The position numbers and the translations under genes are program-made. The notes below the pieces were generated by a model, which ran no database searches, was not told the origin of the DNA, and was given only the letters and a program-made list of their open reading frames with translations. Positions 1-64,000 of a stretch of DNA of 64,000 bases are shown here, in pieces; positions within the stretch are counted from its first letter, which is position 1; every line of letters starts with the position of its first letter. The DNA comes from Scyliorhinus canicula. Its lineage: Eukaryota. The DNA is taken from assembly GCF_902713615.1 (NCBI RefSeq), contig NC_052157.1, positions 56,881,790 through 56,945,789 of the forward strand, read 5' to 3'.

Positions 1-250
1 TCCCCTTTATCCCCGTAAGCCAGTAACCCCACTTAACCTTTCCTGGACACTGAGGGAAATTTAGAATAGCCAATCCACCTGATCTGCACGTCTTTGGACT
101 GTGGGAGAAAACCGCAGCACCCGGAGGAAACCCACGCACACACGGGGAGGATGTGCAGACTTCGCACAGACAGTGACCCAAGCCAGGAATCGAACTGGGA
201 CCCTGGAGCTGTGAAGCAACCGTGATAACCACTGTGCTACCATGCTGCCC
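1..250 (-). mobile_element. HE1-type shark SINE
   Basis: Reverse complement begins gggcagcatggtagcacagtggtt..., with B-box-like gttcgattcc and the core gggtttcctccgggtgct. Confidence 0.9.
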
Positions 251-254
251 TAAC

Positions 255-1075
255 CTCTACCTTCCCCTCACATACCAACCTGCTGTTTTGGTACCCTTTA
301 ACCATTATACCTCTTGTAGCTTTACTGTTCCCTTCCACCCCACTTGCTAGTTGAAAGTCCTATTTATCCTTTCCACTAGAACACTGGTCCCAGATCAGTT
401 CAGGTGGAGACTGTCCCAATGGTGCAGATCACTCCTGTCCCAATGCTGATGCCAATGCCCCATGGAATGGAACCCCTCCTCCCCTCCTTCCCTCACCATT
501 CCTTTAGCCACGTGTTTACTTCCTTAATTTTCTCATCCCTATGCCAATTTGCAAAGGTCTTGGGTAGTGATCCACAGATTATAACCCGTGAAGACCTGTT
601 CTTTAATTTTGTTCCTAGTTCCTGATAATCCCCAAACAGGTCTTCTTTCATAGCCTTGCCTATATTGTTTGTCCCAACATGGACCACAATAACTGGATCC
701 TCAAGCCGGTTCAAGCCAGTTGGAGATGTTTGTCACCCTGGTTCCGGGCAGGCAGCATGTCACGCGGCACTCTGGGTCCTGTTTGCAAAGGATGCTATCA
801 GTTCCCCTAATTATATAATTCCCTCAACTATTATCTTTTTGCACCTCCACCGTCTCCGCTGCTTGAATGGCCACCCCTACCATGGTACAATGGTCGGCTC
901 GCTCATCCTCCCTACAGTCCTTTTCCTCACCTACAAAGGGAGCAAGGTCCTCATACATGTTGGACAAGGTCAAGAGCTGAGGCTCTTCCATTTCTGAATT
1001 TAGGATCCCTCCATCTGCCTCACTCACAGTCACACTCTACTGTTAACACACTGCTGTCCCTGACCACTGGCTGAA
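255..1075 (-). mobile_element. CR1 LINE ORF1 fragment (SGNH esterase-like), degenerate
   Basis: Minus-strand VIVVHVGTNNIGK...LGTKLKNRSSRVIICGSLP...VNTWLKEW; homologue at ~57935-58755. Confidence 0.8.
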
Positions 1076-1479
1076 TTTGAGGTACTTAATTGGCAGGATG
1101 CGAACACCTGACTGTTTCAGCCCTCCCTCCTCCTCCCCTTAACACATCATCCCACTAATTGGGATCTGACCATCTGACTAAGGTTAAGCACAATATCTCT
1201 CATTATCTACTCCCCAGGAGACCTTCTTTCTGTCAAGAAAGTTCCATTAGCTGTACTTCAGCAAACAATATCCACGGCTGGAATGAATTATGATCTGACT
1301 TTTATGGTGCTTTAATTGCACCTCTGTAGCCCCAAACTCTAGCTGCCTTTCAACCCAGGATTCTTTTAAAACTATTACTGCAGCAGTCAGATACACACCC
1401 GATCTCAGACTTTTAACCATTAATGTCCCAGCTGCGTACGATATAATCTATGTGAAATTCCTACATTCATCAAAGCACA

Positions 1480-2030
1480 TCTTCCACATGTCTTGTGGGA
1501 TTTTGGGATTCAAGTGCGGGCATCAACAGTTGGAGTTGTCCCGAGGGCCTGTAACCATCATCAGCCTGCAAGGATCCCTTCATACTTATGTCCATCCTTG
1601 AGAAGCTCTTCGACGCTACACGATTTGGACCTGTCTAGCAGATCTTCTTGGACACTTCCAGGGGAGTGGATGCGATCACCAACTCAACAATTCTGTCTGC
1701 TCGCTCTGCGTTTGAAAATTCACAGTATGCACTCTTTTCTCTGCACCTGTTGACAACGTGGTCTACAGATTATATAGGCTGCTGGCGAAATAACAGGAAA
1801 TCTGACCAATAAATACAGAATTTTAACTTGAATTTGATTCAGTCTTCCAATGTCGCCCATGCCTTTTGGGGATGGTTTCACTCTTCTGCTGTTATTCCCC
1901 ATGTTTCAGTCTGTGTCGACCTTCGTTCCCAATTGCTGGATGAGCTTTAGTGGCTTGCCCGTCTGGTTCAGACACACCTGAATCAAGAAACCACAATGTC
2001 TAAACATTTTGAATCAGGATGTTGCACCTC
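1480..2030 (-). pseudogene. Gypsy-type gag relic
   Basis: With stops and frameshifts: AIGNEGRHRL..WGITAEE...FRQQP..SVDHVVNRCREKSAYCEFS..RADRIVELVIASTP; duplicated at ~59160-59710. Confidence 0.6.
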
Positions 2031-2440
2031 AAACTTGGGTCTGACTCGCATTACGGAAACTCTAAAATTAGCGTACAAACTTGGGTCTGACTCGCATTAC
2101 GGAAACTCTAAAATTAGCGTACAACCATCCCCTTTATTATATCTTTCCAGATGACCCCAAAAGTATAAAAACACCGCTATATAGGGTATCAGAAGCTCTG
2201 TCGCACACAGTATCAAATACCGTCCTACACAAGGCACCAAAAACTCACGGCTTGGACGTAAATACCACCCGTTAAGAGGCAATGTGATCTGACTCCCTCT
2301 TGGTGGATCCCAATGTCCTCTCTGAGTCCTGGACCTAGGGTCTGGCTTCTTAAGATGGTCATTCCTGCAGTTTATCATTCCAGAACGTCCGTTGTCTCTC
2401 CTTCTTTTACGGATCTTTCTCACGCTTCCAGTTGAGATTA

Positions 2441-2790
2441 ATGTAGGAATTTCAGAGATATTGTTTTATAGGTATTTGGTGCAGTAAGGGTTACAAACCT
2501 GGGTTAATATGTGGGTGTGTGACTGCTGCGGTAGTGTTTATAAAGAATCCGTGTTTGAAAGGATTGGGAGTCAGAAGTGCAATTAAGCCATCATAAAGTT
2601 TGGGCTAATGGGGTTTTGATTGGATTAAGGGGGGTTCCCTGAGGAGATGGTAGGATACAGCTTGATAAGATGATGTAATTAATGGGAGGAGCTAAGATAT
2701 CAGGCATTTTGCAGAAAAGCAGTTTTAGTTGAGTTTTAGATTGGGATGTGAGCAGGAATCAAACACAGGAAGTAGTTGAGGTAAAAACGT
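2441..2790. mobile_element. LTR-like sequence; a diverged inverted copy lies at ~1100-1475
   Basis: Starts tgtaggaatttca; the reverse complement of 1300-1475 shares tgtaggaatttca, tgactgctgc.gta, aaagaatcc and cag.agtgcaatta. Confidence 0.5.
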
Positions 2791-3341
2791 TGTGCGATTT
2801 CAAGCAGGAGTTAGATATAGCTCTAGGGGCTAAACGGAACAAGAGATATGGGGGGAAGGCGGGATCAGGATATTGAACTTGATGATCAGCCATGATCATA
2901 ATGAATGGTGGAGCAGGCTTGAAGGGCCGAGTGGCCTCCTCCTACTTCTATTTCTAATGTATGTTTCTATGTAAGGATGCTGCGGGGACTTTAGGAGAGG
3001 ATGCGGAAGTGGAGTTGAGGCAGAGGGTCGGCCCTGATGGTATTGGATGGGGGAAGATGTATGGAGGGGGCGAATGGCCTCCTCCAGCTTTTTGTTTGTT
3101 CACGTCCATTTCACCGGAAGTGGGCATCGCTGGGCCAGGAAAGCATTTATTTCACATCCCCAATTGTCCGTTGAAGGGAGTGATTCTCTGGGCCATTTCA
3201 GGGGGGGAAGTTGAGTCGACCTCATTACCATGTGGGTATGGAATCAAGTATAGGCTAGACCAGGGTAAGGATGGCAATTTCCTTCTCCTAAAGAGACGTG
3301 AGTGTACCAAATGTGTCTTTATGACAATCCATGATGGTTTT

Positions 3342-3682
3342 GGGCAGCACGGTAGCATGGTGGTTAGCATAAATGCTTCACAGCTCCAGGGTCCCAGGTT
3401 CGATTTCCGGCTGGGTCACTGTCTGTGCGGAGTCTGCACGTCCTCCCCGTGTGTGCGTGGGTTTCCTCCGGGTGCTCCGGTTTCCTCCCACAGTCCAAAG
3501 TGCAGATTAGGTGGATTGGCCATGATAAATTGCCCTTAGTGTCCTAATAGTAAGGTTAAGGGGGGGAGTTGTTGGGTTGCGGGTATAGGGTGGATACGTG
3601 GGTTTGAGTAGGGTGATCATTGCTCGGCACAACATCGAGGGCCGAAGGGCCTGTTCTTTGCTGTACTGTTCTATGTTCTATG
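3342..3682 (+). mobile_element. HE1-type SINE
   Basis: gggcagcacggtagcatggtggttagc head, conserved core, (ttctatg)n tail; copy B at ~61026-61366. Confidence 0.9.
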
Positions 3683-3834
3683 TTGTCACAGTCGCCTTGA
3701 CAGTCCCGGGTTTCATGTATCGAACTTTAAGTTCCTCAGCTCCATGTTCCACATGCTGTTATGTAACTGGACGTCTTTGCCAAAGGCAATCCCTCAACCA
3801 GACCACTAACCGCCACCGGCTCTCCCTTCCACAG

Positions 3835-4137
3835 AACCTCTGGTCCTTACTCCTCCTCCCAATTGCTCGTGTGATGCTCCGCAGCGACGTTATGTTTCCT
3901 GTGGGACTCGGGTTCCAGTTGGGGATGTCGCCCGGATCGACTGGCTGAGAAACGGCGAGGAGGTGAGGCGGGAGAACCGGACGCAGTTGGTCAAACCTGC
4001 CGGCGATGGTTCCGCGAGATTGGAGAGCCAGGTTCCATTACCCGTGCCCAGCCCAGGCACTGAGGTGAATTACACATGTATGTTGACCCACACCTCCGGC
4101 GGCATCATCGACTGGAGGCAGTACATAGCAGTGAGCG
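3835..4137 (+). CDS. Ig-superfamily C1-type domain exon (copy A)
   Basis: Acceptor ctctcccttccacag|AA, donor G|gtaagt, 303 nt, phase 1-1, no stops: (E)PLVLTPPPNCSCDAPQRRYVSCGTRVPVGDVARIDWLRNGEEVRRENRTQLVKPAGDGSARLESQVPLPVPSPGTEVNYTCMLTHTSGGIIDWRQYIAVS. Cys-x13-Trp, 58 aa between canonical Cys, DG..S..L and YTC..H C1 hallmarks. Confidence 0.9.
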
Positions 4138-4394
4138 GTAAGTGTCCTGTTCTCCAATCCCTCCCCGGTGGGCTCACTGGTGCGATTAGCGTCCTGCCAG
4201 CTGTGGCTCATTGGCTCTTACGCTTTCTCTTTCCCTTCTGGGTCACCAATTTAAGACCACTCCCAAAATTGAAACCCCATAAGCACAGGCTGAAACTCCC
4301 AGTGCCAGCCCAAAGAAGCGCTGCACTGTCGTGGGCCAGTGTGAAGGGAGCATTATCGGAGGCTCAGTAATGAGGGAGCACCGTACTGTCAAAG

Positions 4395-4710
4395 AGGGTA
4401 CTGAGGGAGTGCTGCACTGTCAGAGGGTCAGTACTGAGGGAGTGCTGCACTGTCAGAGGGTCAATTTTGAGGGAGTGCTGCACTGTTGGAGGGTCAGTAC
4501 TGAGGGAGTGTTGCACTTTCAGAGGGTCAGTACTGAGGGAGTGCTGCACTGTCAGAGGGTCAATTTTGAGGGAGTGCTGCACTGTTGGAGGGTCAGTACT
4601 GAGGGAGTGTTGCACTTTCAGAGGGTCAGTACTGAGGGAGTGTTGCACTTTCAGAGGGTCAGTACTGAGGGAGTGCTGCACTGTCAGAGGGTCAATACTG
4701 AGGGAGTGTG
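4395..4710 (+). repeat. 33-bp tandem repeat in the C1-TM intron
   Basis: Unit gtactgagggagtgctgcactgtcagagggtca; copy B (~62087-62303) is exactly 99 bp (3 units) shorter. Confidence 0.95.
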
Positions 4711-4933
4711 TATACCTGTGCCTGCCTATGTAATCATTGTACGTGGGAACCACTTTCATCTCTCCTCTCTGGGTTCGCGATGCAGGATTTTTTTCTAACC
4801 AACCCTCACAAGCGGTGGATTGGGATTTAGACAAGGGAGATGATTGGATCGTGTGACAGAGATTTACAGATGTCAGAAAATTATGATTAATCACACTGAG
4901 CATTATAATCTCCTAATATCTCTCTCGTTTCAG

Positions 4934-5049
4934 AATCCCCCGGACACCCCGTGCTCTTGTATGTTCTATTGATCGTAAATTCAACCATAATTCTGCTGTT
5001 GGTTATGGCCGTTGGTCTGAAAAAACCTTCCGTGTGCAGCCGCTGCTAA
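4934..5049 (+). CDS. Transmembrane plus short cytoplasmic tail exon (copy A), terminal coding exon
   Basis: Acceptor tctctcgtttcag|AA in phase 1, matching the C1 exon donor; (E)SPGHPVLLYVLLIVNSTIILLLVMAVGLKKPSVCSRC*; ~23-aa hydrophobic run followed by KK. Confidence 0.85.
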
Positions 5050-5666
5050 GCTCACTGATGTCTATCCACTCTCTCTCGCTATCTCTCTCTGTCTCCCCAT
5101 CCATGAAGTCACTGCATGTACAAGACCCTGGCTGCTGAAATCAGCAACCCCCCTTCAAACCTCCAACCGCCTACCCTTCAATGTGAGCTCGGTCCATCAC
5201 CCCCCACCTCCCGCCCACCTTCCACCTCAAGCTTCTGGACTCTTCACCTCGGAATCAACAATTGGGCGACAATTTCGGAGTTGGGAGTCAGCATCGGGAG
5301 GTGGACCCATCATTCTCGAAACTCTGCCTTGCGTAATGTTAAGCACAATCCTGGGACTGTTCAAAATTAAATTAATCTTACTCCATCAGCTTAGGGAGTT
5401 TTACGGCTTTGAAGAACAGGAAATATATCCTGAACCCATGTGAGTTGAACGAATTTCCAAATTTGACCTTATTTACCAGCTTGCTTTGCAAGACCAGGTG
5501 TTGAAATGTGAAAAAACAATCTACTTAAAGCTGCAGACTGCTTCCTCGCAGATGAACAAGAACCATTGGACTGCGAAAGGGAAAGAAAATGCACTTGAAT
5601 CCCACAGTCACAAAAAGCGTGTTAAACTCAACATTTGGCCAATGTTTCATGTGGTGTTCAATGGTT

Positions 5667-5672
5667 AATAAA
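5667..5672 (+). terminator. Candidate polyadenylation signal of the IgSF gene (copy A)
   Basis: AATAAA ~620 nt after the stop codon, followed by a GT-rich tract (tttgaatgtgttggtctgtt). Confidence 0.5.
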
Positions 5673-6034
5673 TCACCGTTTGAATGTGTTGGTCTGTTCG
5701 CTGATCCACGTTCACTGTGCTCAATTCATCACATCTACAAACAGAACTCGAGAGCGCAAGGAACTGACGGCAGAGGATGTTCCGGATTCTGGGCGGAGAG
5801 CATTTGTTCATAAATCCTCTAATTCCTGAGATATTTTAGAGGACCATTTAATAAGCCTATTGTAGATCTAGAAACAGCATCACCTCTGCAGTGCTGGGAG
5901 ATAAATCGGAACTCTGCAGCCTTGTGATTGTCTGATCCTGCTTGCAGCACACCCTTGCCCATGGCTTTCCCGGGAACGTGTGGCGGTTTCAATGGAAAAT
6001 GTTGAGTGTGTAGCATTCTGAAGGTTTGGTACAA

Positions 6035-6600
6035 TAGAGGAACATAGAACATAGAACGATACAGCGCAGTACAGGCCCTTCGGCCCACGATGTTGCACCG
6101 ACATGGGAAGTCAAAAACTAAAGGTCATCTAACCTACACTATGCCATTATCATCCATATGCTTATCCAATAAACTTTTAAATGCCCTCAATGTTGGCGAG
6201 TTCACTACTGTTGCAGGTAGGGCATTCCACGGCCTCACCACTCTTTGCGTAAAAAACCTACCTCTGACGTCTGTCCTATATCTATTACCCCTCAATTTAA
6301 GGCTATGTCCCCTCGTGCTAGCCACCTCCATCCGTGGGAGAAGGCTCTCACTGTCCACCCTATCTAACCCTCTGATCATTTTGTATGCCTCTATTAAGTC
6401 ACCTCTTAACCTTCTTCTCTCTAACGAAAACAACCTCAAGTCCATCAGCCTTTCCTCTTAAGATTTTCCCTCCATACCAGGCAACATCCTGGTAAATCTC
6501 CTCTGCACCCGTTCCAAAGCTTCCACATCCTTCCTATAATGAGGCGACCAGAACTGTACGCAATATTCCAAATGCGGCTGTACCAGAGTTTTGTACAGGA
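6035..6600 (-). mobile_element. CR1 LINE 3' end
   Basis: Minus-strand LFSLERRRLRGDLIEAYKMIRGLDRVD...RFFTQRVV plus (catagaa)n tail. Confidence 0.9.
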
Positions 6601-6794: not shown

Positions 6795-8400
6795 GAACAA
6801 AGAACAAAGGAAAGTACTGCACAGGAACAAGCCCTTCGGCCCTCCAAGCCAGCGCCGACCATGCTGCCTGTCGAAACTAAAATATTCTACACTTCCAGGG
6901 TCCGTATCCCTCTATTCCCACTCTATTCATGTATTTGTCAAGGTGCCCCTTAAATGTCACTATCATCCCTGCTTCCACCGTCTCCTCCGGCAACGAGTTC
7001 CAGGCGCCCACTACCCTCTGTGTAAAAAACTTGCCTCGTACATCTCCTCTAAACCTTGCCCCTCGCACCTTAAACATATGCCCCCTAGTAATTGACCCCT
7101 CTACCCTGGGAAAAAGTCTCTGACTATCCACCCTGTCTATGCCCCTCATAATTTTGTAGACCTCTATCAGGTTGCCCCTCAACCTCCACCATTCCAGTGA
7201 GAAGAAACCGAGCTTATTCAACCGCTCCTCATAGCTAATGCCCTCCATATCAGGCAACATCCTGGTAAATCTCTTCTGCACGCTCTCTAAAGCCTCCACA
7301 TCCTCTGGTCGTACGGCGACCAGAATTGAACACTGTACTCCAAGTGTGGCCGAACTAAGGTTCTATACAGCTGCAACATGACTTGCCAATTCTTATACTC
7401 AATGCCCCGACCAATGAAGGCAAGCATGCCGTATGCCTTCTTGACTACCTTCTCCGCCTGTATTGCCCCTTTCAGTGACCTGTATACCTGTACATCTAGA
7501 TCTCTCTGACTGTCAATACTCTTGAGGGTCCTACCATTCATTGTATATTCCCTACCTGTATTAGACCTTCCAAAATGCATTACCTCACATTTGTCCGGAT
7601 TAAACTCCATCTGTCATCTCTCCCCCCAAGTCTCCAGATGATCTAAATCCTTCTGTATCCTCTGACAGTCCTCATCGCTATCCACAATTCCACCAACTTT
7701 TGTGTCGTCTGCAAACTTACTAATCAGACCAGTTACATTTTCCTCCAAATCATTTATATATGCTACGAACAGCAATGGTGCCAGCACTGATCCCTGCGGA
7801 ACACCACTATTCACAGCCCTCCAATCAGAAAAGCACCCTTCCATTGCTACTCTCTGCCTTCTATGACCTAGCCAGCTCCGTATCCATCTTGCCAGCTCAC
7901 CTCTGATCCTGTGTGACTTCACCTTTTGTATCAGTCTGCCATGAGGGACCTTGTCAAAGGCCTTACTGAAGTCCACATAGACAACATCCACTGCCCTACC
8001 TGCATCAATCATTTTTGTGACCGCCTCGAAAAACTCTATCAAGTTAGTGAGACACGACCTGCCCTTCACAAAACCATGCTGCCTCTCGCTAATACATCCA
8101 CTTGCTTCCAAATGGGAGTAGATCCTGTCTCGAAGAATTCTCTCCAGTAATTTCCCTCCCACTGACATAAGGCTCATCGGTCCGTAGTTCCATGGATTAT
8201 CCTTGCTACACTTCTTAATCAAAGGAAAAACATTGGCTATTCTCCAGTCCTCCGGGACATCACCTGAAGGCAGTGAGGATCCAAAGATTTCTACCAAGGC
8301 CTCAGCAATTTACTCTCTTGCCTCCTTCAGTATTCTGGGCTAGATCCCATCAGGCCCTGGGGACTTAACTACCTTAATATTTTTCAAGACGCCAACACCT
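6795..8400 (-). mobile_element. CR1 LINE, reverse transcriptase to 3' end, degenerate
   Basis: QHGFVKGRSCLTNL, DFSKAFDKVPH, GVPQGS, KFADD and RPHLEYSVQFWSP motifs. Confidence 0.95.
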
Positions 8401-11769: not shown

Positions 11770-11954
11770 ACTAGTTTCAATTCTTGAGTCACAGATATAG
11801 CAAAGGGCGGGGCCATTTGGCCCATCGTGTCTGTGCTGTCTATTTGAAAGATCTTTCTGATCTTTCTCAGTGCAGTGCAGCCCTCGCTCAGTACTGACCT
11901 TCTGTCAGAGCAGCACAACCCACTATTAATTTATCTATAACCCATCTGACATTG

Positions 11955-12485
11955 CTCGATTAGATTCCAGTCTGGAACTCACTCCCGGGTATCTGTTATT
12001 CTGTATATAAACCATCCCGAACTTCTCGATTAGATTCCAGTCTGTAACTAACTCCCGGGTATCTGTTATTCTATATATAAACCATCCCGAACTCCTCGAG
12101 TCGATTCCAGTCTGTAACTCACTCCCGGGAATCTGTTATTCTATATATAAACCATCCCGAACTCCTCGAGTCGATTCCAGTCTGTAACTCACTCCTGGGT
12201 AACTGTTATTCCTTATATAAACCCCCTGAAATGCTCAATTAGACTCCAGTCTGTAACTCACTCCCTGGTATCTTTTATTCTATATATAAACCACGCTGAA
12301 CCCCTCTGTTAGATTTCAGTCTGTAACTCACTCCTGGGAATCTGTTATTATATATATAAACCACCCGGAATCCCTCTATTAGATTTCAGTCTGTAACTCA
12401 CTCCTGGGAATCTGTTATTATATATATAAACCACCTCGAATCCCTCTATTAGATTTCAGTCTGTAACGCACTCCTGGATATCTGT
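11955..12485 (+). repeat. ~69-bp satellite array
   Basis: Repeated tagattccagtctgtaactcactcccgggtatctgttattctatatataaaccatcccgaac. Confidence 0.95.
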
Positions 12486-13859: not shown

Positions 13860-15242
13860 GCTGAACCTGCCCTAGTGGTGTTTTTGGCAGGCAAGGTAGC
13901 CAGACGACGGAGAAGGCGGCGGCAGCTGCAGTGTCAACTGAGATCACGAGGCAGTGACCCATGTGCAGGGTCCCTACCCACACCCTGAGGACCCGGCCAG
14001 TGTGACACCCAGAGGGAGAAGCCCACGGCGGCCCAAGGTGCACAGCGCATGCCGCAGGAGGCTCCGCCTCAACAAGGGGTTGGTGCAGCACCTGTGCCAT
14101 GTCTTTGCGAACTCCGGGTGGAGTTGGAGGACACCCGCTCCCGGTGGCCGTCAATGTCACCGCAGCCCTGATCTTTTATGCCTCAAGGACATTTCAGGGC
14201 TCGAGAAGGGACCTGTGTGGCATCTCTCAAGATACAGCCCACAGGTCATCCGACAGGTCACAGATACCCTATTTGCTCAGACAGCAAACTATAAAAACAT
14301 GGACCAAGCCCAACCAGATGCCCGGTCAGCAGGATTCTCCGCCATCGCTGGGATGCCCCAGATCCAGGAGCCAATAGATGGCTTTGTGCGTACCGGGCCA
14401 TCTGGGAGTGCCGCACGTCAACAGGGAGGGGTTCAATTCCTTGCACATTCAGCTTGTGTGCAACCACCACATGTAGATCATGTACATGTTGCACGCTTCC
14501 CGGGGAGTGTGCACGACAGCGACATCCTGGGGCAGTCAGACATCCCCGGCCTGTTCGAGGATCACCCCAGGATGGCCAGTTGGCTCTTCGGGGATAAGGG
14601 GTACCCACTGAGGACCTGTCTAATGACGCCAGGACAGAGACTAGTGACTGATACGGAGACCTGACACAATGAGGCTCATGCGCCCACCCAGGTTGTCATT
14701 GCTCAAAATGTGGTCCCGAGGCCTTAACTGCTCCGGTGGTACGCAGCAGTACACCGCCTAGAGGACTGGATTTGTTTATTGTCACATGTACCGAGGTACA
14801 ATGAAATGTATTTTTCTGCGAACAGCTCAACAAATCATTAAGTACATGAAAAGAAAAGGAAATAAAAGAAAATACATAATAGGGCATCACAAGGTACACA
14901 ATGTAACTACATAAGACCAGCATCGGTGAAGTATACAGGGGTGTTGTGTTAATCAGGTCAGTCCATAAGAGGGTCGCCCACCTTGTGGGGGTCTGTGCTA
15001 TCCTCCACAACCTGGCACAGCAGTAAGGTGATGCAGTGGAGGTGGAGGAGGAGGATGAACATGTGCCCACCTCAGAGGAGGAGAAGGAGGAGGAAGAGGA
15101 GGTGAGGAGAAGGTGCTGGACTAGGAGGGACTGGGGGATGATCCTGGAGAACCAGCCAGAGGCTGGAGGACAGGCAGCAGCAGCGAGGATCTGGCAAGCC
15201 CGGAGGGCTAGGGAGGCCCTCATCAATGCCTGCTTCACGTAG
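13860..15242 (+). pseudogene. Harbinger (HARBI1-like) DDE transposase relic, interrupted by a Rex1 3' fragment at ~14770-14965
   Basis: CRRRLRLNK, LPVAVNVTAALIFYAS, AGMPQIQEPIDG, ARFPGSVHDS, LFGDKGYPL, acidic tail ending ARRAREALINACFT*; frameshifted. Confidence 0.9.
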
Positions 15243-15404: not shown

Positions 15405-16948
15405 CAGCACTGTCAGCGGGTCACTGTCAGCGGGTCACTGTCAGCGGGACACTGTCAGCGGGTCAGCGGGTCACTGTCAGCGGGTCACTGTCAGCGGGTC
15501 AGCGGGTCAGCGGGTCACTGTCAGCGGGTCACTGTCAGCGGGTCACTGTCAGCGGGTCACTGTCAGCGGGACACTGTCAGCGGGTCAGCGGGTCACTGTC
15601 AGCGGGTCACTGTCAGCGGGTCACTGTCAGCGGGTCACTGTCAGCGGGTCACTGTCAGCAGGTCACTGTCAGCGGGTCACTGTCAGCGGGTCACTGTCAG
15701 CGGGTCAGCGGGTCACTGTCAGCGGGTCACTGTCAGCGGGTCACTGTCAGCAGGTCACTGTCAGCAGGTCACTGTCAGCGGGTCACTGTCAGCGGGTCAC
15801 TGTCAGCGGGTCACTGTCAGCGGGTCACTGTCAGCAGGTCACTGTCAGCGGGTCACTGTCAGCGGGTCAGCGGGTCACTGTCAGCGGGTCACTGTCAGCG
15901 GGTCACTGTCAGAGGGTCACTGTCAGCGGGTCACTGTCAGCAGGTCACTGTCAGCGGGTCACTGTCAGCGGGTCACTGTCAGCGGGTCACTGTCAGCGGG
16001 TCAGCGGGTCACTGTCAGCGGGTCACTGTCAGCGGGTCACTGTCAGCGAGTCAGCGGGTCACTGTCAGCGGGTCACTGTCAGCGGGTCACTGTCAGCGGG
16101 TCACTGTCAGCGGGTCACTGTCAGCGGGTCAGCGGGTCACTGTCAGCGGGTCAGCGGGTCACTGTCAGCGGGTCACTGTCAGCGGGTCACTGTCAGCGGG
16201 TCACTGTCAGCGGGTCAGCGGGTCACTGTCAGCGGGTCACTGTCAGCGGGTCACTGTCAGCGGGTCACTGTCACTGTCAGCGGGTCACTGTCAGCGGGTC
16301 ACTGTCAGCGGGTCACTGTCACTGTCAGCGGGTCACTGTCAGCGGGTCACTGTCACTGTCAGCGGGTCACTGTCAGCGGGTCACTGTCAGCGGGTCACTG
16401 TCAGCGGGTCACTGTCAGCGGGTTACTGTCAGCAGGTCACTGTCAGCGGGTCACTGTCAGCGGGTCACTGTCAGCGGGTCACTGTCAGCGGGTCACTGTC
16501 AGCGGGTCACTGTCAGCGGGTTACTGTCAGCAGGTCACTGTCAGCGGGTCACTGTCAGCGGGTCACTGTCAGCGGGTCACTGTCAGCGGGTAACTGTCAG
16601 CGGGTCACTGTCAGCGGGTCACTGTCAGCGGGTCAGCGGGTCACTGTCAGCGGGTCAGCGGGTCACTGTCAGCGGGTCACTGTCAGCGGGTCACTGTCAG
16701 CGGGTCACTGTCAGCTGGTCACTGTCAGCGGGTCACTGTCAGCGGGTCACTGTCAGCGGGTCACTGTCAGCGGGTCACTGTCACTGTCAGCGGGTCACTG
16801 TCAGCGGGTCACTGTCAGCGGGTCACTGTCAGCGGGTCACTGTCAGCGGGTCACTGTCAGCGGGTCAGCGGGTCACTGTCAGCGGGTCACTGTCAGCGGG
16901 TCACTGTCAGCGGGTCACTGTCAGCGGGTCACTGTCAGCGGGTCACTG
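15405..16948 (+). repeat. 14-bp minisatellite (GGGTCACTGTCAGC)n, roughly 110 units
   Basis: Directly visible; variants are 6-nt deletions (GGGTCAGC), CACTGT duplications and single substitutions. Confidence 0.98.
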
Positions 16949-16949
16949 T

Positions 16950-19149: not shown

Positions 19150-20010
19150 GTCGACCTTTCACCCCCTGCAAACAATGGCTATTGGAATTCAACCAAAATT
19201 GGTGGCCTTTCTCCTAGTTGTCGCAATCCTGGATGATGCACTGTGGCTGTCAGAGCTGGAGTTTCTCAAGGAGGAGGAAGCTGCAGAAGCGAAGCAAGCC
19301 ACAGGGGAACAGGAGGCAGCCACTGAAGAATGGAGAGCCGACTGCCCAACAGGCTGAGGAGAAGGAGGTGTTAAGAAGGCCTTGAGTGTACTGGGAGTGC
19401 CTGTCATTCAAGGACCCGCCGGACCGGGCATACCGTCCAAAACTCCTGCTGTGCAGGGGGACGGTGTGACATATCTGCCAGATCATAGCGCAACTGGCAC
19501 TGCAGGGTATGGCGGAGGGCACCTGCTCCGGGTGGCCACCCAAGTGACGGTCGCCTTGAACCTTTACACCACGGGATCCTTCCAGGCACCGAGTGGGGGC
19601 TTGTCCGTGATCTCCCATATCGGTGCACAGGTGCATCCATGCAAACACGGAGGTCCTTTCTGCCCAGTCGGCTCAAAACATCCATTTCAATGTGGGCTGA
19701 ACCCACCAGGATGCCCCATCACCAACATGGCCTGGGTCCAGGGGGTGATTAGTAGGGTGCACGTTGCTGTAGGAGCACCTGCAAATGACAGGCCGCTCTA
19801 CACAAGCCGAAAGAGATTCCCCTCGATGAACTTGCAGCTGATTTGTGACCATCAGCTCCTCATCATACATGTCTGTGCCCGATACCCAGGCAGTGCGCAC
19901 GTCGCCTTCATCCTGGCACACTTGATGATTCCTGACATTTTTGAGGCCCACCCAGGGCTGGGGGGTTTGCTCCTGGGCAACAGGGGTTATCCAATGGCCA
20001 TGGCATATAT
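19150..20010 (+). pseudogene. Second Harbinger transposase relic (5' two-thirds)
   Basis: QVTVALNLYTTGSFQ, RKRFPSMNLQLICDH, CARYPGSAHVAFIL, LLGNRGYP. Confidence 0.9.
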
Positions 20011-20067
20011 CTGTCAATTACCAACTGGGTACAGACATTCAGTCGGATTCTCCGTTCCTGAGACTAA

Positions 20068-20545
20068 TGGCTGGATTCTCCGATCCTGCGGCTATGTCCG
20101 GACAATCTCATGCAACATGGCGCCGGCTGCGCGCCGACACGGTCTGCCAAAAATATCACCCCCGCAACCAGCCTCGCCTCATCTGGACCACCCCCCACCA
20201 GCCCCCTAGCCCCCACCGAAGGCCCCCTAGCCAGTGGAATGGCTCCACTCCCAACTGTGGCAACGCTGGACAAGTGCGCAGCCGCCAGACAAGGTCCCCG
20301 AACGGTATGACCACATGCGAGCGAGGCCATCGGGGACTCGGCCCATTGGGGGCGGAGCATTGGGGGAGGGCCTTTGGTGACGTCCTGAGGCCGTCCATAC
20401 AGCATGCAGTGTACTCCCCAAGTATGGCATTTTTGAGGGGGCGGAGCGTCGCAAAAACACCCCCGCCCCTAAATCCAGCATAAACATTAATACTCCGGCC
20501 GATCGCGAATGCGATTTTGGCATTGACGATCGGAGAATCCAGCCC
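20068..20545. mobile_element. Harbinger-derived MITE inserted in the terminus of another Harbinger relic (~20040-21420)
   Basis: TIR (t/g)ggctggattctccgatc / gatcggagaatccagccc with TAA TSD (20065-67 and 20546-48). Confidence 0.85.
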
Positions 20546-44355: not shown

Positions 44356-44384
44356 AGAGACCTGGGAGTGAGTTTCTGATGCGC

Positions 44385-57589: not shown

Positions 57590-57930
57590 ATTTACAGTGC
57601 AGAAGGAAGCCATTCAGCCCATCGAGTCTGCACCGGCCCTTGGAAAGAGCACCCTACTTAAGCCCCGTGCCTCCACCCTATCTCCTTTATCCCCGTAAGC
57701 CAGTAACCCCACTTAACCTTCCCTGGACACTGAGGGAAATTTAGAATAGCCAATCCACCTGATCTGCACGTCTTTGGACTGTGGGAGAAACCGCAGCACC
57801 CGGAGGAAACCCACGCACACACGGGGAGGATGTGCAGACTTCGCACAGACAGTGACCCAAGCCAGGAATCGAACTGGGACCCTGGAGCTGTGAAGCAACC
57901 GTGATAACCACTGTGCTACCATGCTGCCCT
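57590..57930 (-). mobile_element. HE1-type SINE (its right part corresponds to 1-250)
   Basis: Conserved core and tail. Confidence 0.9.
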
Positions 57931-60900
57931 AACCTCTACCTTCCCCTCACATACCAACCTGCTGTTTTGGTACCCTTTAACCATTATACCTCTTGTAGCT
58001 TTACTGTTCCCTTCCACCCCACTTGCTAGTTGAAAGTCCTATTTATCCTTTCCACTAGAACACTGGTCCCAGATCAGTTCAGGTGGAGACTGTCCCAATG
58101 GTGCAGATCACTCCTGTCCCAATGCTGATGCCAATGCCCCATGGAATGGAACCCCTCCTCCCCTCCTTCCCTCACCATTCCTTTAGCCACGTGTTTACTT
58201 CCTTAATTTTCTCATCCCTATGCCAATTTGCAAAGGTCTTGGGTAGTGATCCACAGATTATAACCCGTGAAGACCTGTTCTTTAATTTTGTTCCTAGTTC
58301 CTGATAATCCCCAAACAGGTCTTCTTTCCTAGCCTTGCCTATATTGTTTGTCCCAACATGGACCACAATAACTGGATCCTCAAGCCGGTTCAAGCCAGTT
58401 GGAGATGTTTCTCACCCTGGTTCCGGGCAGGCAGCATGTCACGCGGCACTCTTGGTCCTGTTTGCAAAGGATGCTATCAGTTCCCCTAATTATATAATTC
58501 CCTCAACTATTATCTTTTTGCACCCCCACCGTCTCCGCTGCTTGAATGGCTACCCGTACCATGGTACAATGGTCGGCTCGCTCATCCTCCCTACAGTCCT
58601 TTTCCTCACCTAGAAAAGGGAGCAAGGTCCTCATACATGTTGGACAAGGTCAAGAGCTGAGGCTCTTCCATTTCTGAATTTAGGATCCCTCCATCTGCCT
58701 CACTCACAGTCACACTCTACTGTTAACACACTGCTGTCCCTGACCACTGGCTGAATTTGAGGTACTTAATTGGTTGGATGCGAACACCTGACTGTTTCAG
58801 CCCTCCCCCCTCCTCCCCTTAACACATCATCCCACTAATTGGGATCTGACCATCTGACTAAGGCTAAGCACAATATCTCTCATTATCTACTCCCCAGGAA
58901 ACCTTCTTTCTGTCAAGAAAGTTCCATTAGCTGTACTTCAGCAAACAATATCCACGGCTGGAATGAATTATGATCTGACTTTTATGGTGCTTTAATTACA
59001 CCTCTGTAGCCCCAAACTCTAGCTGCCTTTACACCCAGGATTCTTTTAAAACTATTACTGCAGCAGTCAGATACACACCCCATCTCAGACTTTTAACCAT
59101 TAATGTCCCAGCTGCGTACGATATAATCTATATGTGAAATTCCTACATTCATCAAAGCACATCTTCCACATGTCTTGTGGGATTTTGGGATTCAAGTGCG
59201 GGCATCAACAGTTGGAGTTGTCCCGAGGGCCTGTAACCATCATCAGCCTGCAAGGATCCCTTCATACTTATGTCCATCCTTGAGAAGCTCTTCGACGCTA
59301 CACGATTTGGACCTGTCTAGCAGATCTTCTTGGACACTTCCAGGGGAGTGGATGCGATCACCAACTCAACAATTCTGTCTGCTCGCTCTGCGTTTGAAAA
59401 TTCACAGTATGCACTCTTTTCTCTGCACCTGTTGACAATGTGGTCTACAGATTATATAGGCTGCTGGCGAAATAACAGGAAATCTGACCAATAAATACAG
59501 AATTTTAACTTGAATTTGATTCAGTCTTCCAATGTCGCCCATGCCTTTTGGGGATGGTTTCACTCTTCTGCTGTTATTCCCCATGTTTCAGTCTGTGTCG
59601 ACCTTCATTCCCAATTGCTGGATGAGCTTTAGTGGCTTGCCCGTCTGGTTCAGACACACCTGAATCAAGAAACCACAATGTCTAAACATTTTGAATCAGG
59701 ATGTTGCACCTCAAACTTGGGTCTGACTCGCATTACGGAAACTCTAAAATTAGCGTACAAACTTGGGTCTGACTCGCATTACGGAAACTCTAAAATTAGC
59801 GTACAACCATCCCCTTTATTATATCTTTCCAGATGACCCCAAAAGTATAAAAACACCGCTATATAGGGTATCAGAAGCTCTGTCGCACACAGTATCAAAA
59901 TACCGTCCTACACAAGGCACCAAAAACTCACGGCTTGGACGTAAATACCACCCGTTAAGAGGCAATGTGATCTGACTCCCTCTTGGTGGATCCCAATGTC
60001 CTCTCTGAGTCCTGGACCTAGGGTCTGGCTTCTTAAGATGGTCATTCCTGCAGTTTATCATTCCAGAACGTCCGTTGTCTCTCCTTCTTTTACGGATCTT
60101 TCTCACGCTTCCAGTTGAGATTAATGTAGGAATTTCAGAGATATTGTTTTATAGGTATTTGGTGCAGTAAGGGTTACAAACCTGGGTTAATATGTGGGTG
60201 TGTGACTGCTGCGGTAGTGTTTATAAAGAATCCGTGTTTGAAAGGATTGGGAGTCAGAAGTGCAATTAAGCCATCATAAAAGTTTGGGCTAATGGGGTTT
60301 TGATTGGATTAAGGGGGGTTCCCTGAGGAGATGGTAGGATACAGCTTGATAAAATGATGTAATTAATGGGAGGAGCTAAGATATCAGGCATTTTGCAGAA
60401 AAGCAGTTTTAGTTGAGTTTTAGATTGGGATGTGAGCAGGAATCAAACACAGGAAGTAGTTGAGGTAAAAACGTTGTGCGATTTCAAGCAGGAGTTAGAT
60501 ATAGCTCTAGGGGCTAAACGGAACAAGAGATATGGGGGGAAGGCGGGATCAGGATATTGAACTTGATGATCAGCCATGATCATAATGAATGGTGGAGCAG
60601 GCTTGAAGGGCCGAGTGGCCTCCTCCTACTTCTATTTCTAATGTATGTTTCTATGTAAGGATGCTGCGGGGACTTTAGGAGAGGATGCGGAAGTGGAGTT
60701 GAGGCAGAGGGTCGGCCCTGATGGTATTGGATGGGGGAAGATGTATGGAGGGGGCGAATGGCCTCCTCCAGCTTTTTGTTTGTTCACGTCCATTTCACCG
60801 GAAGTGGGCATCGCTGGGCCAGGAAAGCATTTATTTCACATCCCCAATTGTCCGTTGAAGGGAGTGATTCTCTGGGCCATTTCAGGGGGGGAAGTTGAGT

Positions 60901-61518
60901 CGACCTCATTACCATGTGGGTATGGAATCAAGTATAGGCTAGACCAGGGTAAGGATGGCAATTTCCTTCTCCTAAAGAGACGTGAGTGTACCAAATGTGT
61001 CTTTATGACAATCCATGATGGTTTTGGGCAGCACGGTAGCATGGTGGTTAGCATAAATGCTTCACAGCTCCAGGGTCCCAGGTTCGATTTCCGGCTGGGT
61101 CACTGTCTGTGCGGAGTCTGCACGTCCTCCCCGTGTTTGCGTGGGTTTCCTCCGGGTGCTCCGGTTTCCTCCCACAGTCCAAAGTGCAGATTAGGTGGAT
61201 TGGCCATGATAAATTGCCCTTAGTGTCCTAATAGTAAGGTTAAGGGGGGGAGTTGTTGGGTTGCGGGTATAGGGTGGATACGTGGGTTTGAGTAGGGTGA
61301 TCATTGCTCGGCACAACATCGAGGGCCGAAGGGCCTGTTCTTTGCTGTACTGTTCTATGTTCTATGTTGTCACAGTCGCCTTGACAGTCCCGGGTTTCAT
61401 GTATCGAACTTTAAGTTCCTCAGCTCCATGTTCCACATGCTGTTATGTAACTGGACGTCTTTGCCAAAGGCAATCCCTCAACCAGACCACTAACCGCCAC
61501 CGGCTCTCCCTTCCACAG

Positions 61519-61821
61519 AACCTCTGGTCCTTACTCCTCCTCCCAATTGCTCGTGTGATGCTCCGCAGCGACGTTATGTTTCCTGTGGGACTCGGGTTCC
61601 AGTTGGGGATGTCGCCCGGATCGACTGGCTGAGAAACGGCGAGGAGGTGAGGCGGGAGAACCGGACGCAGTTGGTCAAACCTGCCGGCGATGGTTCCGCG
61701 AGATTGGAGAGCCAGGTTCCATTACCCGTGCCCAGCCCAGGCACTGAGGTGAACTACACATGTATGTTGACCCACACCTCCGGCGGCATCATTGACTGGA
61801 GGCAGTACATAGCAGTGAGCG
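61519..61821 (+). CDS. Ig-superfamily C1-type domain exon (copy B)
   Basis: Same splice sites; protein identical to copy A; two nucleotide differences, both silent (AAT/AAC, ATC/ATT). Confidence 0.9.
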
Positions 61822-62526
61822 GTAAGTGTCCTGTTCTCCAATCCCTCCCCGGTGGGCTCACTGGTGCGATTAGCGTCCTGCCAGCTGTGGCTCATTGGCT
61901 CTTACGCTTTCTCTTTCCCTTCTGGGTCACCTGGTCACCAATTTGAGACCACTCCCAAAATTGAAACCCCATAAGCACAGGCTGAAACTCCCAGTGCCAG
62001 CCCAAAGAAGCGCTGCACTGTCGTGGGCCAGTGTGAAGGGAGCATTATCGGAGGCTCAGTAATGAGGGAGCACCGTACTGTCAAAGAGGGTACTGAGGGA
62101 GTGCTGCACTGTCAGAGGGTCAGTACTGAGGGAGTGCTGCACTGTCAGAGGGTCAATTTTGAGGGAGTGCTGCACGGTTGGAGGGTCAGTACTGAGGGAG
62201 TGTTGCACTTTCAGAGGGTCAGTACTGAGGGAGTGCTGCACTGTTGGAGGGTCAATTCTGAGGGAGTGCTGCACTGTCAGAGGGTCAATACTGAGGGAGT
62301 GTGTATACCTGTGCCTGCCTATGTAATCATTGTACGTGAGAACCACTTTCATCTCTCCTCTCTGGGTTCGCGAAACAGGAATTTTTTCTAACCAACCCTC
62401 ACAAGCGGTGGATTGGGATTTAGACGCGGGAGATGATTGGATCGTGTGACAGAGATTTACAGATGTCAGAAAATTATGATTAATCACACTGAGCATTATA
62501 ATCTCCTAATATCTCTCTCGTTTCAG

Positions 62527-62642
62527 AATCCCCCGGACACCCCGTTCTCTTGTATGTTCTATTGATCGTAAATTCAACCATAATTCTGCTGTTGGTTATG
62601 GCCGTTGGTCTGAAAAAACCTTCCGTGTGCAGCCGCCGCTAA
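62527..62642 (+). CDS. Transmembrane plus short tail exon (copy B)
   Basis: (E)SPGHPVLLYVLLIVNSTIILLLVMAVGLKKPSVCSRR*; GTG/GTT silent change and TGC/CGC in the last codon relative to copy A. Confidence 0.85.
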
Positions 62643-63265
62643 GCTCACTGATGTCTTTCCACTCTCTCTCGCTCTCTATCTCTCTCTCTGTCTCTCCATC
62701 CATGAAGCCACTGCATGTACAAGACCCTGGCTGCTGAAATCAGCAACCCCCCTTCAAACCTCCAACCGCCTACCCTTCAATGTGAGCTCGGTCCATCACC
62801 CCCCACCTCCCGCCCACCTTCCACCTCAAGCTTCTGGACTCTTCACCTCGGAATCAACAATTGGGCGACAATTTCGGAGTTGGGAGTCAGCATCGGGAGG
62901 TGGACCCATCATTCTCGAAACTCTGCCTCGCGTAATGTTAAGAACAATCCTGGGACTGTTCAAAATTAAATTAATCTTACTCCATCAGCTTAGGGAGTTT
63001 TACGGCTTTGAAGAACAGGAAATATATCCTGAACCCATGTGAGTTGAACGAATTTCCAAATTTGACCTTATTTACCAGCTTGCTTTGCAAGACCAGGTGT
63101 TGAAATGTGAAAAAACAATCTACTTAAAGCTGCAGACTGCTTCCTCACAGATGAACAAGAACCATTGGACTGCGAAAGGGAAAGAAAATGCACTTGAATC
63201 CCACAGTCACAAAAAGCGTGTTAAACTCAACATTCGGCCAATGTTTCATGTGGTGTTCAATGGTT

Positions 63266-63271
63266 AATAAA
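63266..63271 (+). terminator. Candidate polyadenylation signal (copy B)
   Basis: AATAAA at the position homologous to 5667. Confidence 0.5.
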
Positions 63272-64000
63272 TCACCGTTTGAATGTGTTGGTCTGTTCGC
63301 TGATCCACGTTCACTGTGCTCAATTCATCACATCTACAAACAGAACTCGAGAGCGCAAGGAACTGACGGCAGAGGATGTTCCGGATTCTGGGCGGAGAGC
63401 ATTTGTTCATAAATCCTCTAATTCCTGAGATATTTTAGAGGACCATTTAATAAGCCTATTGTAGGTCTAGAAACAGCATCACCTCTGCAGTGCTGGGAGA
63501 TAAATCGGAACTCTGCAGCCTTGGGATTGTCTGATCCTGCTTGCAGCACACCCTTGCCCATGGCTTTCCCGGGAACGTGTGGTGGTTTCAATGGAAAATG
63601 TTGAGTGTGCAGCATTCTGAAGGTTTGGTACAATAGAGGAACATAGAACATAGAACGATACAGCGCAGTACAGGCCCTTCGGCCCACGATGTTGCACCGA
63701 CATGGGAAGTCAAAAACTAAAGGCCATCTAACCTACACTATGCCATTATCATCCGTATGCTTATCCAATAAACTTTTAAATGCCCTCAATGTTGGCGAGT
63801 TCACTACTGTTGCAGGTAGGGCATTCCACGGCCTCACCACTCTTTGCGTAAAAATCCTACCTCTGACGTCTGTCCTATATCTATTACCCCTCAATTTAAG
63901 GCTATGTCCCCTTGTGCTAGCCACCTCCATCCGCGGGAGAAGGCTCTCACTGTCCACCCTATCTAACCCTCTGATCATTTTGTATGCCTCTATTAAGTCA

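What the first reader, a model, noticed from the sequence alone, without database searches (positions are those of the whole stretch)
3835..5672. Hidden antigen-receptor-like IgSF gene: C1 exon + TM exon with very short tail
Seen: two phase-compatible exons that splice to ...C1 domain-VSESPGHP-VLLYVLLIVNSTIILLLVMAVGL-KKPSVCSRC*, with three N-glycosylation sequons (NCS, NRT, NYT) and two extra Cys (CSC) in the A strand. Established: C1-set domains are largely confined to Ig, TCR, MHC, tapasin, SIRP and non-rearranging VJ-C1 molecules such as PRARP. Inference: the sequence does not match the shark TCR, IgL, IgH or MHC constant and TM regions as I recall them, so it may be a non-rearranging VJ-C1/PRARP-like or unnamed receptor. 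The ORF track shows only half of it.
Basis: partly seen in the sequence, partly recalled or inferred. Interest (0 to 1): 0.85.

Follow-up and report, generated by a model that had tools for sequence, protein, structure and literature searches.

The report
Catshark non-rearranging V-C1 membrane receptor gene
The two exons are real, spliced and expressed, and form the 3' end of a catshark gene for an antibody-like surface protein found only in sharks, which databases mislabel as a "lambda light chain-like" gene and no paper I could find describes.

Summary
Exon A (3835-4137) and exon B (4934-5049 coding, 3'UTR to at least 5792) are joined GT..AG in RNA contigs of four runs from three samples. 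In one contig the 30 letters before exon A encode EGAGTRLFVH, a J-like G strand.

The genome is Scyliorhinus canicula. The exons are the last two of RefSeq XP_038670304.1 (293 aa), auto-named "immunoglobulin lambda-1 light chain-like". The product has a signal peptide, a V domain with a J-like motif, one C1 domain, an uncharged TM helix with a central Asn, and a 9-residue tail.

The C1 call holds at family level from Pfam, a PDB profile search and a fold search. Orthologues were found only in seven shark species. The V domain is more conserved than the C domain, and its CDR3-like loop is invariant. A second catshark gene of this family, probably adjacent, keeps about 90% of the V domain but has Lys where this gene has Asn in the TM helix, which is a paired-receptor pattern.

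It is not an Ig light chain, a TCR chain, an MHC chain or UrIg2. SIRP-alpha is the nearest named natural protein. PRARP orthology could not be tested.

A 99% identical second copy of both exons lies 57.7 kb downstream, with no V exon in the 55 kb before it. I rate it a new member of a known kind, of moderate interest.

The parts
3835..4137 (+). Exon A (copy 1): one complete C1-type Ig domain, phase 1/1. It encodes residues 155-255 of XP_038670304.1 and carries C-x-C in the A-strand region, the canonical Cys-Trp-Cys, and YTCMLTH.
   Evidence: RNA contigs; fold matches.
4138..4933 (+). Intron of 796 nt with GT..AG ends. It holds a 33-bp tandem repeat at 4359-4708 that is abundant in transcriptomes as a genome-wide repeat.
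   Evidence: skips 796, GT..AG; TRF.
4934..5049 (+). Coding part of the last exon (copy 1): connecting peptide ESPGHP, a 23-residue TM helix with a central Asn, the tail KKPSVCSRC, and a stop at 5047-5049.
5050..5792 (+). 3'UTR as covered by the 1706-nt X1 contig. AATAAA lies at 5667-5672. X3 contigs run on to about 6076.
   Evidence: table 8.
61519..61821 (+). Exon A, second copy. It differs from copy 1 by two silent changes.
62527..62642 (+). Coding part of the last exon, second copy. It has one silent change, and the last codon reads Arg instead of Cys. Stop at 62640-62642.
57681..64000 (+). Duplicate of window 1-6401 (98-99% identical), cut by both window ends. No V or leader exon occurs anywhere in the window.

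Best explanation
Shown: the two exons are the last two exons of a transcribed Scyliorhinus canicula gene (RefSeq XP_038670304.1, 293 aa). Its product is a type I membrane glycoprotein. It has a signal peptide, one V domain whose G strand carries a J-like G-x-G-T-x-L-x-V motif, one C1-type constant domain (exon A), and a short connecting peptide. These are followed by an uncharged TM helix with a mid-membrane Asn and a 9-residue basic, Cys-containing tail (exon B). It belongs to a small family found so far only in sharks.

Inferred: the chain is a non-rearranging surface receptor. Its V domain binds a fixed, conserved ligand, because the CDR3-like loop C-Y-I-S-F-L-V-G is invariant across seven species. 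Because C1 domains normally act as pairing modules, and because of the conserved C-x-C next to the V-C junction, the chain probably sits in the membrane as a homo- or heterodimer. The tail has no signalling motif, so any signal must pass through a partner recruited by the polar TM residue.

In catsharks a second gene of the family, LOC119974972, whose consecutive RefSeq numbering suggests it is the neighbour, keeps a nearly identical V domain. It has a diverged C domain and Lys in place of Asn in the TM helix. That is the classic layout of paired receptors, as with SIRP-beta (Lys, DAP12-coupled) against SIRP-gamma (no charge, no signal). In that reading the window's gene is the non-charged member of such a pair.
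For: - Splice junction in RNA.
- J-like EGAGTRLFVH directly upstream of exon A in an RNA contig.
- Identity to XP_038670304.1.
- Pfam on the full proteins: V-set 41.5 bits. C1-set scores 19-20 bits in the catshark protein and 32.6 bits in the Heptranchias orthologue. Seven of 9 family C domains hit C1-set at E<=0.01.
- C-domain profile against PDB returns only C1 domains: IgM Cmu2, UrIg2, IgE, SIRP-alpha d3, CL.
- C-domain model (pLDDT 81.6) best matches IgG CH2, IgNAR C2/C3, IgM C2/C4 and CL at Z 11-12.7, and MHC II beta2 and TCR C-beta.
- Full-length profile against PDB: SIRP-alpha ectodomain at 3e-18, with V and C1 aligned in one stretch, on a par with Ig light chains.
- Orthologues only in sharks.
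- Identity of the catshark paralogues to this protein: V domain 89-92%, C domain 63-67%.
- Asn and Lys fall in the same TM column.
Against: - There are no functional data of any kind.
- The V and leader exons lie outside the window, so a single VJ exon without RSS was not verified here. Only an unchecked scan note says so.
- The window's own C domain is just under the Pfam C1-set cut-off (20 against 21 bits), and 4 of 9 family members also hit CD80-like C2-set_2.
- The V domain in the full-length AF2 model is poor (pLDDT below 50).
- Dimerisation, adaptor coupling and the receptor-versus-ligand role are inference. Only catsharks are known to have the Lys paralogue, so the pairing may be a recent local feature.
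- Tissue of expression is unknown, because run identities are coded.
Confidence: 0.6

Rival explanations
1. It is the shark orthologue or co-orthologue of the PRARP genes, the non-rearranging VJ-C IgSF pair described in chicken and other non-mammalian bony vertebrates, and so not a new lineage.
For: The overall layout matches as I recall it from memory: VJ, one C domain, TM, and linked paralogues. PRARP is listed among VJ-type IgSF genes in PMC11599192 and PMC10751288.
Against: No non-shark protein reached significance in three word-seeded searches and one exhaustive phmmer run. PRARP sequences and the Fu et al. 2019 paper were not obtainable here, so nothing was tested directly.
Confidence: 0.15
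2. It is a true SIRP-family member, a shark SIRP that has one C1 domain instead of two.
For: SIRP-alpha is the best natural PDB match for V plus C1 in one stretch (3e-18), and SIRP-alpha d3 matches the C profile (2e-9). NCBI named the Heptranchias orthologue SIRP-alpha-like. A Lys-TM paralogue mirrors SIRP-beta.
Against: Ig light chains score about the same. There is only one C1 domain and no ITIM tail. No SIRP appeared among significant hits of the C-domain phmmer run. The similarity is at the level shared by all VJ-C1 proteins.
Confidence: 0.12
3. It acts as a cell-surface ligand or counter-structure (B7, B7-H6 or CD200 style V-C-TM protein with a short tail), not as a receptor that signals through a partner.
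For: The short motif-less tail and V-C-TM layout fit. Whole-model fold hits include CD276, CD80, CD200 and butyrophilins. Atlas feature neighbours include B7-H6-like and OX2 clusters. Four of 9 C domains also hit CD80-like C2-set_2.
Against: The J-like G-x-G-T motif and light-chain/SIRP-like V domain are not typical of B7 V domains. The mid-membrane Asn/Lys alternation between paralogues suggests TM partner recruitment. The whole-model fold hits have TM scores of 0.34 or below and rest on a poor model.
Confidence: 0.12
4. It is what RefSeq calls it, an immunoglobulin lambda-type light chain gene (possibly germline-joined). Or, as exon A alone first suggested, it is an MHC class I alpha3-type exon.
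For: Light chains are top fold and profile hits. Exon A alone best matches MHC class I alpha3 in PDB (E about 5e-4).
Against: A TM exon is spliced to the C exon, and a V domain lies upstream instead of alpha1/alpha2. The CDR3-like loop is invariant across species. Identity to CL or alpha3 is about 15-20%.
Confidence: 0.01

Closest known systems
SIRP family (SIRP-alpha/beta/gamma; PDB 2wng)
   Same: Non-rearranging V domain with a J-like motif followed by a C1 domain, in a type I membrane protein. Family members differ in TM and tail while keeping the V domain: Lys-TM in SIRP-beta, no charge and a tiny tail in SIRP-gamma. It is the best natural profile match.
   Different: SIRPs have two C1 domains, and this protein has one. 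There is no ITIM-tailed member in this small family so far. Sequence similarity is no higher than to Ig light chains. The family was found only in sharks.
UrIg / UrIg2 (shark non-rearranging antigen-receptor-like genes; PMC12227049, PDB 9dmx)
   Same: Shark-restricted, with a non-rearranging VJ-type V domain joined to C1 domains. UrIg2, too, is auto-annotated as a light chain. As in UrIg, the V domain is more conserved than the C domains.
   Different: UrIg has several C domains, and nurse-shark UrIg2 has nine C1 domains plus a TM region. This protein has a single C1. Catshark UrIg2 is another gene, XP_038644097.1.
PRARP-A/B (Fu et al. 2019, J Immunol; not readable here)
   Same: As I recall from memory, these are a VJ plus one C domain plus TM layout, with linked paralogues.
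   Different: PRARP is described in bony vertebrates, and I recall its tails being longer. There was no detectable sequence hit outside sharks in my searches. Not tested directly.
Ig light chains / TCR chains
   Same: V(J)-C1 architecture, phase-1 exon boundaries, and C1 fold.
   Different: No somatic diversity is implied by the invariant CDR3-like loop. Light chains lack a TM exon, and this protein has one. TCR chains have basic TM residues and a connecting-peptide Cys, and this protein lacks both.

Membership tests
Ig C1-set domain | Scores at or above the Pfam PF07654 gathering cut-off (21 bits) | tested here: inconclusive
   The window's domain scores 19.9-20 bits. The Heptranchias orthologue scores 32.6 bits. 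Seven of 9 family members hit at E<=0.01, best 1.7e-9. Four of 9 also hit C2-set_2.
Ig C1-set domain | Seven-strand A-B-E-D / C-F-G fold, closest to Ig, TCR or MHC constant domains | tested here: met
   The AF2 model of the C domain (pLDDT 81.6, seven strands) best matches IgG CH2, IgNAR C2/C3, IgM C2/C4 and CL at Z 11-12.7, and MHC II beta2, TCR C-beta and MR1 alpha3. This is a predicted structure, not a solved one.
Ig C1-set domain | Canonical Cys...Trp...Y-x-C-x-V/L-x-H signature | tested here: met
   VSC...IDW...YTCMLTH in exon A. Cys, Trp, Cys, Leu and His are invariant in the family.
Non-rearranging VJ-C1 receptors (SIRP, PRARP, UrIg kind) | V domain whose G strand carries the J motif (F/x-G-x-G-T-x-L-x-V), joined to C in the germline-encoded transcript | tested here: met
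   E-G-A-G-T-R-L-F-V-H is read in an RNA contig immediately before exon A and in the genome-derived RefSeq protein. The two Gly residues, the Phe and the final Val are invariant in 9 sequences. The first position is Glu instead of Phe or Trp.
Non-rearranging VJ-C1 receptors (SIRP, PRARP, UrIg kind) | V and J encoded in one exon with no RSS | not testable with these tools
   The V exon is outside the window, and no DNA could be fetched for this assembly. An unchecked scan note places a 354-nt single VJ exon 9.6 kb before the window.
SIRP family | V-C1-C1 ectodomain | tested here: not met
   Only one C1 domain lies between V and TM (293 aa).
SIRP family | ITIM tail (alpha) or Lys in the TM helix (beta) | tested here: not met
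   The tail is KKPSVCSRC and the TM helix has Asn. The catshark paralogue LOC119974972 has Lys at that position.
Immunoglobulin lambda light chain (RefSeq name) | Secreted V-J-C chain without a TM region | tested here: not met
   The C exon is spliced to a TM/tail exon in RNA.
UrIg / UrIg2 | VJ followed by three or more C domains; catshark UrIg2 = XP_038644097.1 | tested here: not met
   A single C domain and a different accession.
TCR chains | Basic residues in the TM helix for CD3 assembly and a Cys in the connecting peptide | tested here: not met
   The TM helix has no charged residue, and the connecting peptide ESPGHP has no Cys.
PRARP | Sequence or phylogenetic clustering with chicken or teleost PRARP-A/B | not testable with these tools
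   No PRARP sequence or paper was obtainable. No non-shark relatives were found.

The most novel reading that the evidence does not exclude
The family is a third, so far undescribed, shark-retained lineage of non-rearranging antigen-receptor-like VJ-C1 genes beside UrIg and UrIg2, in the minimal one-V, one-C1, TM format of a TCR or Ig chain. It works as a dimeric innate receptor with Asn/Lys-TM paired forms. It would then be another living candidate for what a pre-RAG antigen-receptor chain looked like.
Probability: 0.2. Interest if true: 0.75.

Novelty: new member of a known kind. Interest (0 to 1): 0.5.

Why it matters
Single-exon VJ genes joined to C1 domains are actively sought as relics of the gene that the RAG transposon split to create Ig and TCR, as with UrIg in 2023 and UrIg2 in 2025. 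This family has the minimal chain format V-C1-TM. It is conserved across both shark superorders, with an invariant binding loop, and in catsharks it shows a paired-receptor style Asn/Lys TM switch. It is currently hidden behind automatic names ("lambda light chain-like", "SIRP-alpha-like", "uncharacterized"). Placing it in V- and C-domain trees and on MHC-paralogous synteny maps is directly doable. That would either add a lineage to the antigen-receptor origin story or extend SIRP or PRARP back to cartilaginous fish.

Tried and rejected
- MHC class I-like gene. Exon A alone best matched alpha3 domains through a P-A-G-D-G...Y-T-C motif. I rejected this once the full protein showed an upstream V domain.
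- Upstream exons in the window. I looked for V and leader exons ahead of the second copy with a regex ORF scan and tblastn with three family proteins. There are none anywhere in the window.
- Fetching genomic DNA of the gene, its paralogue and orthologues.
- Whole-protein AF2 model. The V domain was poor, and fold hits were diffuse across B7, butyrophilin, nectin, TAPBPR and light chains at TM 0.34 or below. I used it only as an architecture-level hint.
- Alignment-seeded homologue search. It found no members beyond sharks.
- Literature searches for PRARP, UrIg, and SIRP in cartilaginous fish. No description of this gene turned up. The UrIg 2023 paper was not held.
- Protein atlas neighbours. 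They gave only generic V-C1 clusters such as B7-H6-like, TAPBPR-like and OX2.

Full report
**1. What is in the sequence**

Exon A spans 3835-4137. It is preceded by a pyrimidine tract and CAG, and followed by GTAAGT. It is phase 1 at both ends. It translates to a 100-residue Ig-like domain with VSC...IDW...YTCMLTH, three sequons (NCS, NRT, NYT) and a C-x-C near its start.

Exon B starts at 4934. It reads (E)SPGHP, a 23-residue hydrophobic helix with a central Asn, then KKPSVCSRC and a stop at 5047-5049.

**2. Transcription and splicing**

RNA-run contigs laid on 2600-6400 show a GT..AG joint from 4136/4137 to 4933/4934 in runs X1 and X3.

A 1706-nt X1 contig has 543 nt that lie outside the stretch. 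These are followed by exon A with no mismatch, then exon B and 3'UTR to 5792.

Depth in the unique intron parts is near zero, while the exons are covered.

Laid on the second copy, X16 and X2 show the equivalent joint. In the X16 contig the 30 letters preceding exon A translate to E-G-A-G-T-R-L-F-V-H.

So a J-like G strand is spliced directly onto this C exon. The AATAAA at 5667-5672 is not the only end, because contigs run to 5792 and about 6076.

**3. Which gene it is**

A word-seeded search with the read-through ORF found a 100% match to RefSeq XP_038670304.1 of Scyliorhinus canicula. This protein is 293 aa, is auto-named "immunoglobulin lambda-1 light chain-like", and lies on a 165-Mb chromosome of GCA_902713615.2. 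The annotated gene spans 37 kb.

tblastn places residues 155-255 and 254-293 on the two exons. It finds no V or leader exon anywhere in the window. An unchecked scan note puts a 354-nt single VJ exon 9.6 kb before the window start. That size fits residues ~37-154, but I could not read that DNA.

**4. Architecture and domain types**

Pfam finds V-set (41.5 bits) at residues 47-154. It finds C1-set at 187-242 with 19.3 bits, just under the 21-bit cut-off. Exon A alone gives 20 bits.

At family level the C1 call is firm, on four lines of evidence:

- The Heptranchias orthologue scores 32.6 bits.
- Seven of 9 C domains hit C1-set at E<=0.01.
- A profile of the 9 C domains hits only C1 domains in PDB: IgM Cmu2, UrIg2, IgE, SIRP-alpha d3 and CL.
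- An AF2 model of the C domain (pLDDT 81.6, seven strands) best matches IgG CH2, IgNAR C2/C3, IgM C2/C4 and CL at Z 11-12.7. It also matches MHC II beta2, TCR C-beta and MR1 alpha3.

The full-length profile hits the SIRP-alpha ectodomain (2wng, 3e-18) with V and C1 aligned in one stretch. That is on a par with Ig light chains.

**5. The family**

Orthologues were found in S. torazame, Mustelus asterias, Heterodontus francisci, Carcharodon carcharias, Rhincodon typus and Heptranchias perlo. Their automatic names are "uncharacterized", "lambda light chain-like" or "SIRP-alpha-like".

Nothing outside sharks reached significance. This held in an exhaustive phmmer run with the C domain and in an alignment-seeded search.

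In the 9-sequence alignment the following are invariant:

- the V-domain canonical residues;
- the whole CDR3-like stretch C-Y-I-S-F-L-V-G;
- the two J-motif glycines.

Mean column identity is 76% in V and 62% in C.

Catsharks have a second gene of the family, LOC119974972. Its RefSeq protein numbers run directly before this gene's, so it is probably the neighbour. Its V domain is 89-92% identical to this gene's, but its C domain is only 63-67% identical. It has Lys where this gene has Asn in the middle of the TM helix.

**6. Interpretation**

Shown: this is a transcribed, conserved, non-diversified V(J)-C1-TM chain with a 9-residue tail.

Inferred:

- It has a fixed ligand specificity, because the binding loop is invariant.
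- It is probably dimeric, because C1 domains are pairing modules and a conserved C-x-C sits at the V-C junction.
- Any signalling depends on a partner recruited through the polar TM residue.
- The Asn/Lys paralogue pair has a shared V domain and a diverged C/TM region. That is the pattern of paired receptors such as SIRP-beta and SIRP-gamma.

None of these four inferences was tested.

**7. What it is not**

- It is not an Ig light chain, because it has a TM exon.
- It is not a TCR chain, because it has no basic TM residue and no connecting-peptide Cys.
- It is not MHC class I, although exon A alone best matched alpha3.
- It is not UrIg2, which has several C domains and in catshark is XP_038644097.1.
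- It fails the SIRP definition of two C1 domains.
- PRARP could not be tested, because neither its sequences nor its paper were obtainable.

**8. The second copy**

Window 1-6401 recurs at 57681-64000 with 98-99% identity, cut by both window ends.

Copy 2 of the exons lies at 61519-61821 and 62527-62642. It is intact, with three silent changes, and the last codon reads Arg instead of Cys.

The 51 kb between the copies holds RT, RNase H/integrase and Harbinger-type DDE ORFs plus satellites. It holds no V exon.

RNA contigs of X1, X3, X15 and X16 carry copy-1 letters. X2 and X8 have contigs carrying the copy-2 Arg codon, the 6-nt insertion and nearby copy-2 letters. X2 comes from the same sample as X1. 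Several contigs are mosaics of the two states.

So both 3' variants are expressed. I cannot tell whether copy 2 is a real partial duplicate, an alternative 3' end, or a retained haplotype in the assembly.

**9. Novelty**

The kind of gene (non-rearranging VJ-C1 IgSF receptors) is known, and the gene model exists in RefSeq. I found no paper describing this family.

Other first-stage notes list several further VJ-C1-TM genes in this genome, so catshark may hold many such genes.

I rate it a new member of a known kind, of moderate interest.

Noticed in passing
window 1-6401 and 57681-64000: A segmental duplication at least 6.4 kb long and 98-99% identical, with a 57.7-kb period, cut by both window ends. 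It carries the C and TM exons but no V exon. Letters of both copies appear in RNA contigs, partly as mosaics, so it may be a real duplicate with gene conversion or a retained haplotype.
   Followed up: partly
window 4359-4708 and 62051-62301: A 33-bp tandem repeat inside the intron, with 10.7 copies in copy 1 and 7.7 in copy 2. It has very high depth in every RNA run, so it is a genome-wide transcribed repeat family.
   Followed up: partly
window 15408-16949: A 14-bp minisatellite (CACTGTCAGCGGGT) with about 111 copies in a GC-rich block (58-61% GC across 14-20 kb). It is open in three frames, giving spurious 430-535 aa ORFs.
   Followed up: no
window 13954-14664 and 19382-20209 (+): Two ORFs with DDE_Tnp_4 (PIF/Harbinger-type transposase) matches, flanking the minisatellite block.
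   Followed up: partly
window 31970-33823 and 38036-40752 (-): Retroelement remains: RNase H plus integrase core in one ORF, a second integrase core, and RT-like ORFs. A LINE-type RT also lies at 7614-8297 (-).
   Followed up: partly
window 11953-12485, 42712-43727, 44090-44374: A 70-bp satellite present in both orientations at three places in the window.
   Followed up: no
P0003 and P0025 (outside the window): The catshark paralogue and the Heptranchias orthologue have RefSeq isoforms that end just after the C domain without a TM region. Secreted forms of this family may therefore exist. In the window, read-through of the 4137 donor stays open to 4367, but RNA depth there is low.
   Followed up: no
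P0001 residues 1-27 (outside the window): There is an unusually long, conserved N-terminal stretch (P-H-x-Q-I motif) before the hydrophobic signal core in most orthologues.
   Followed up: no
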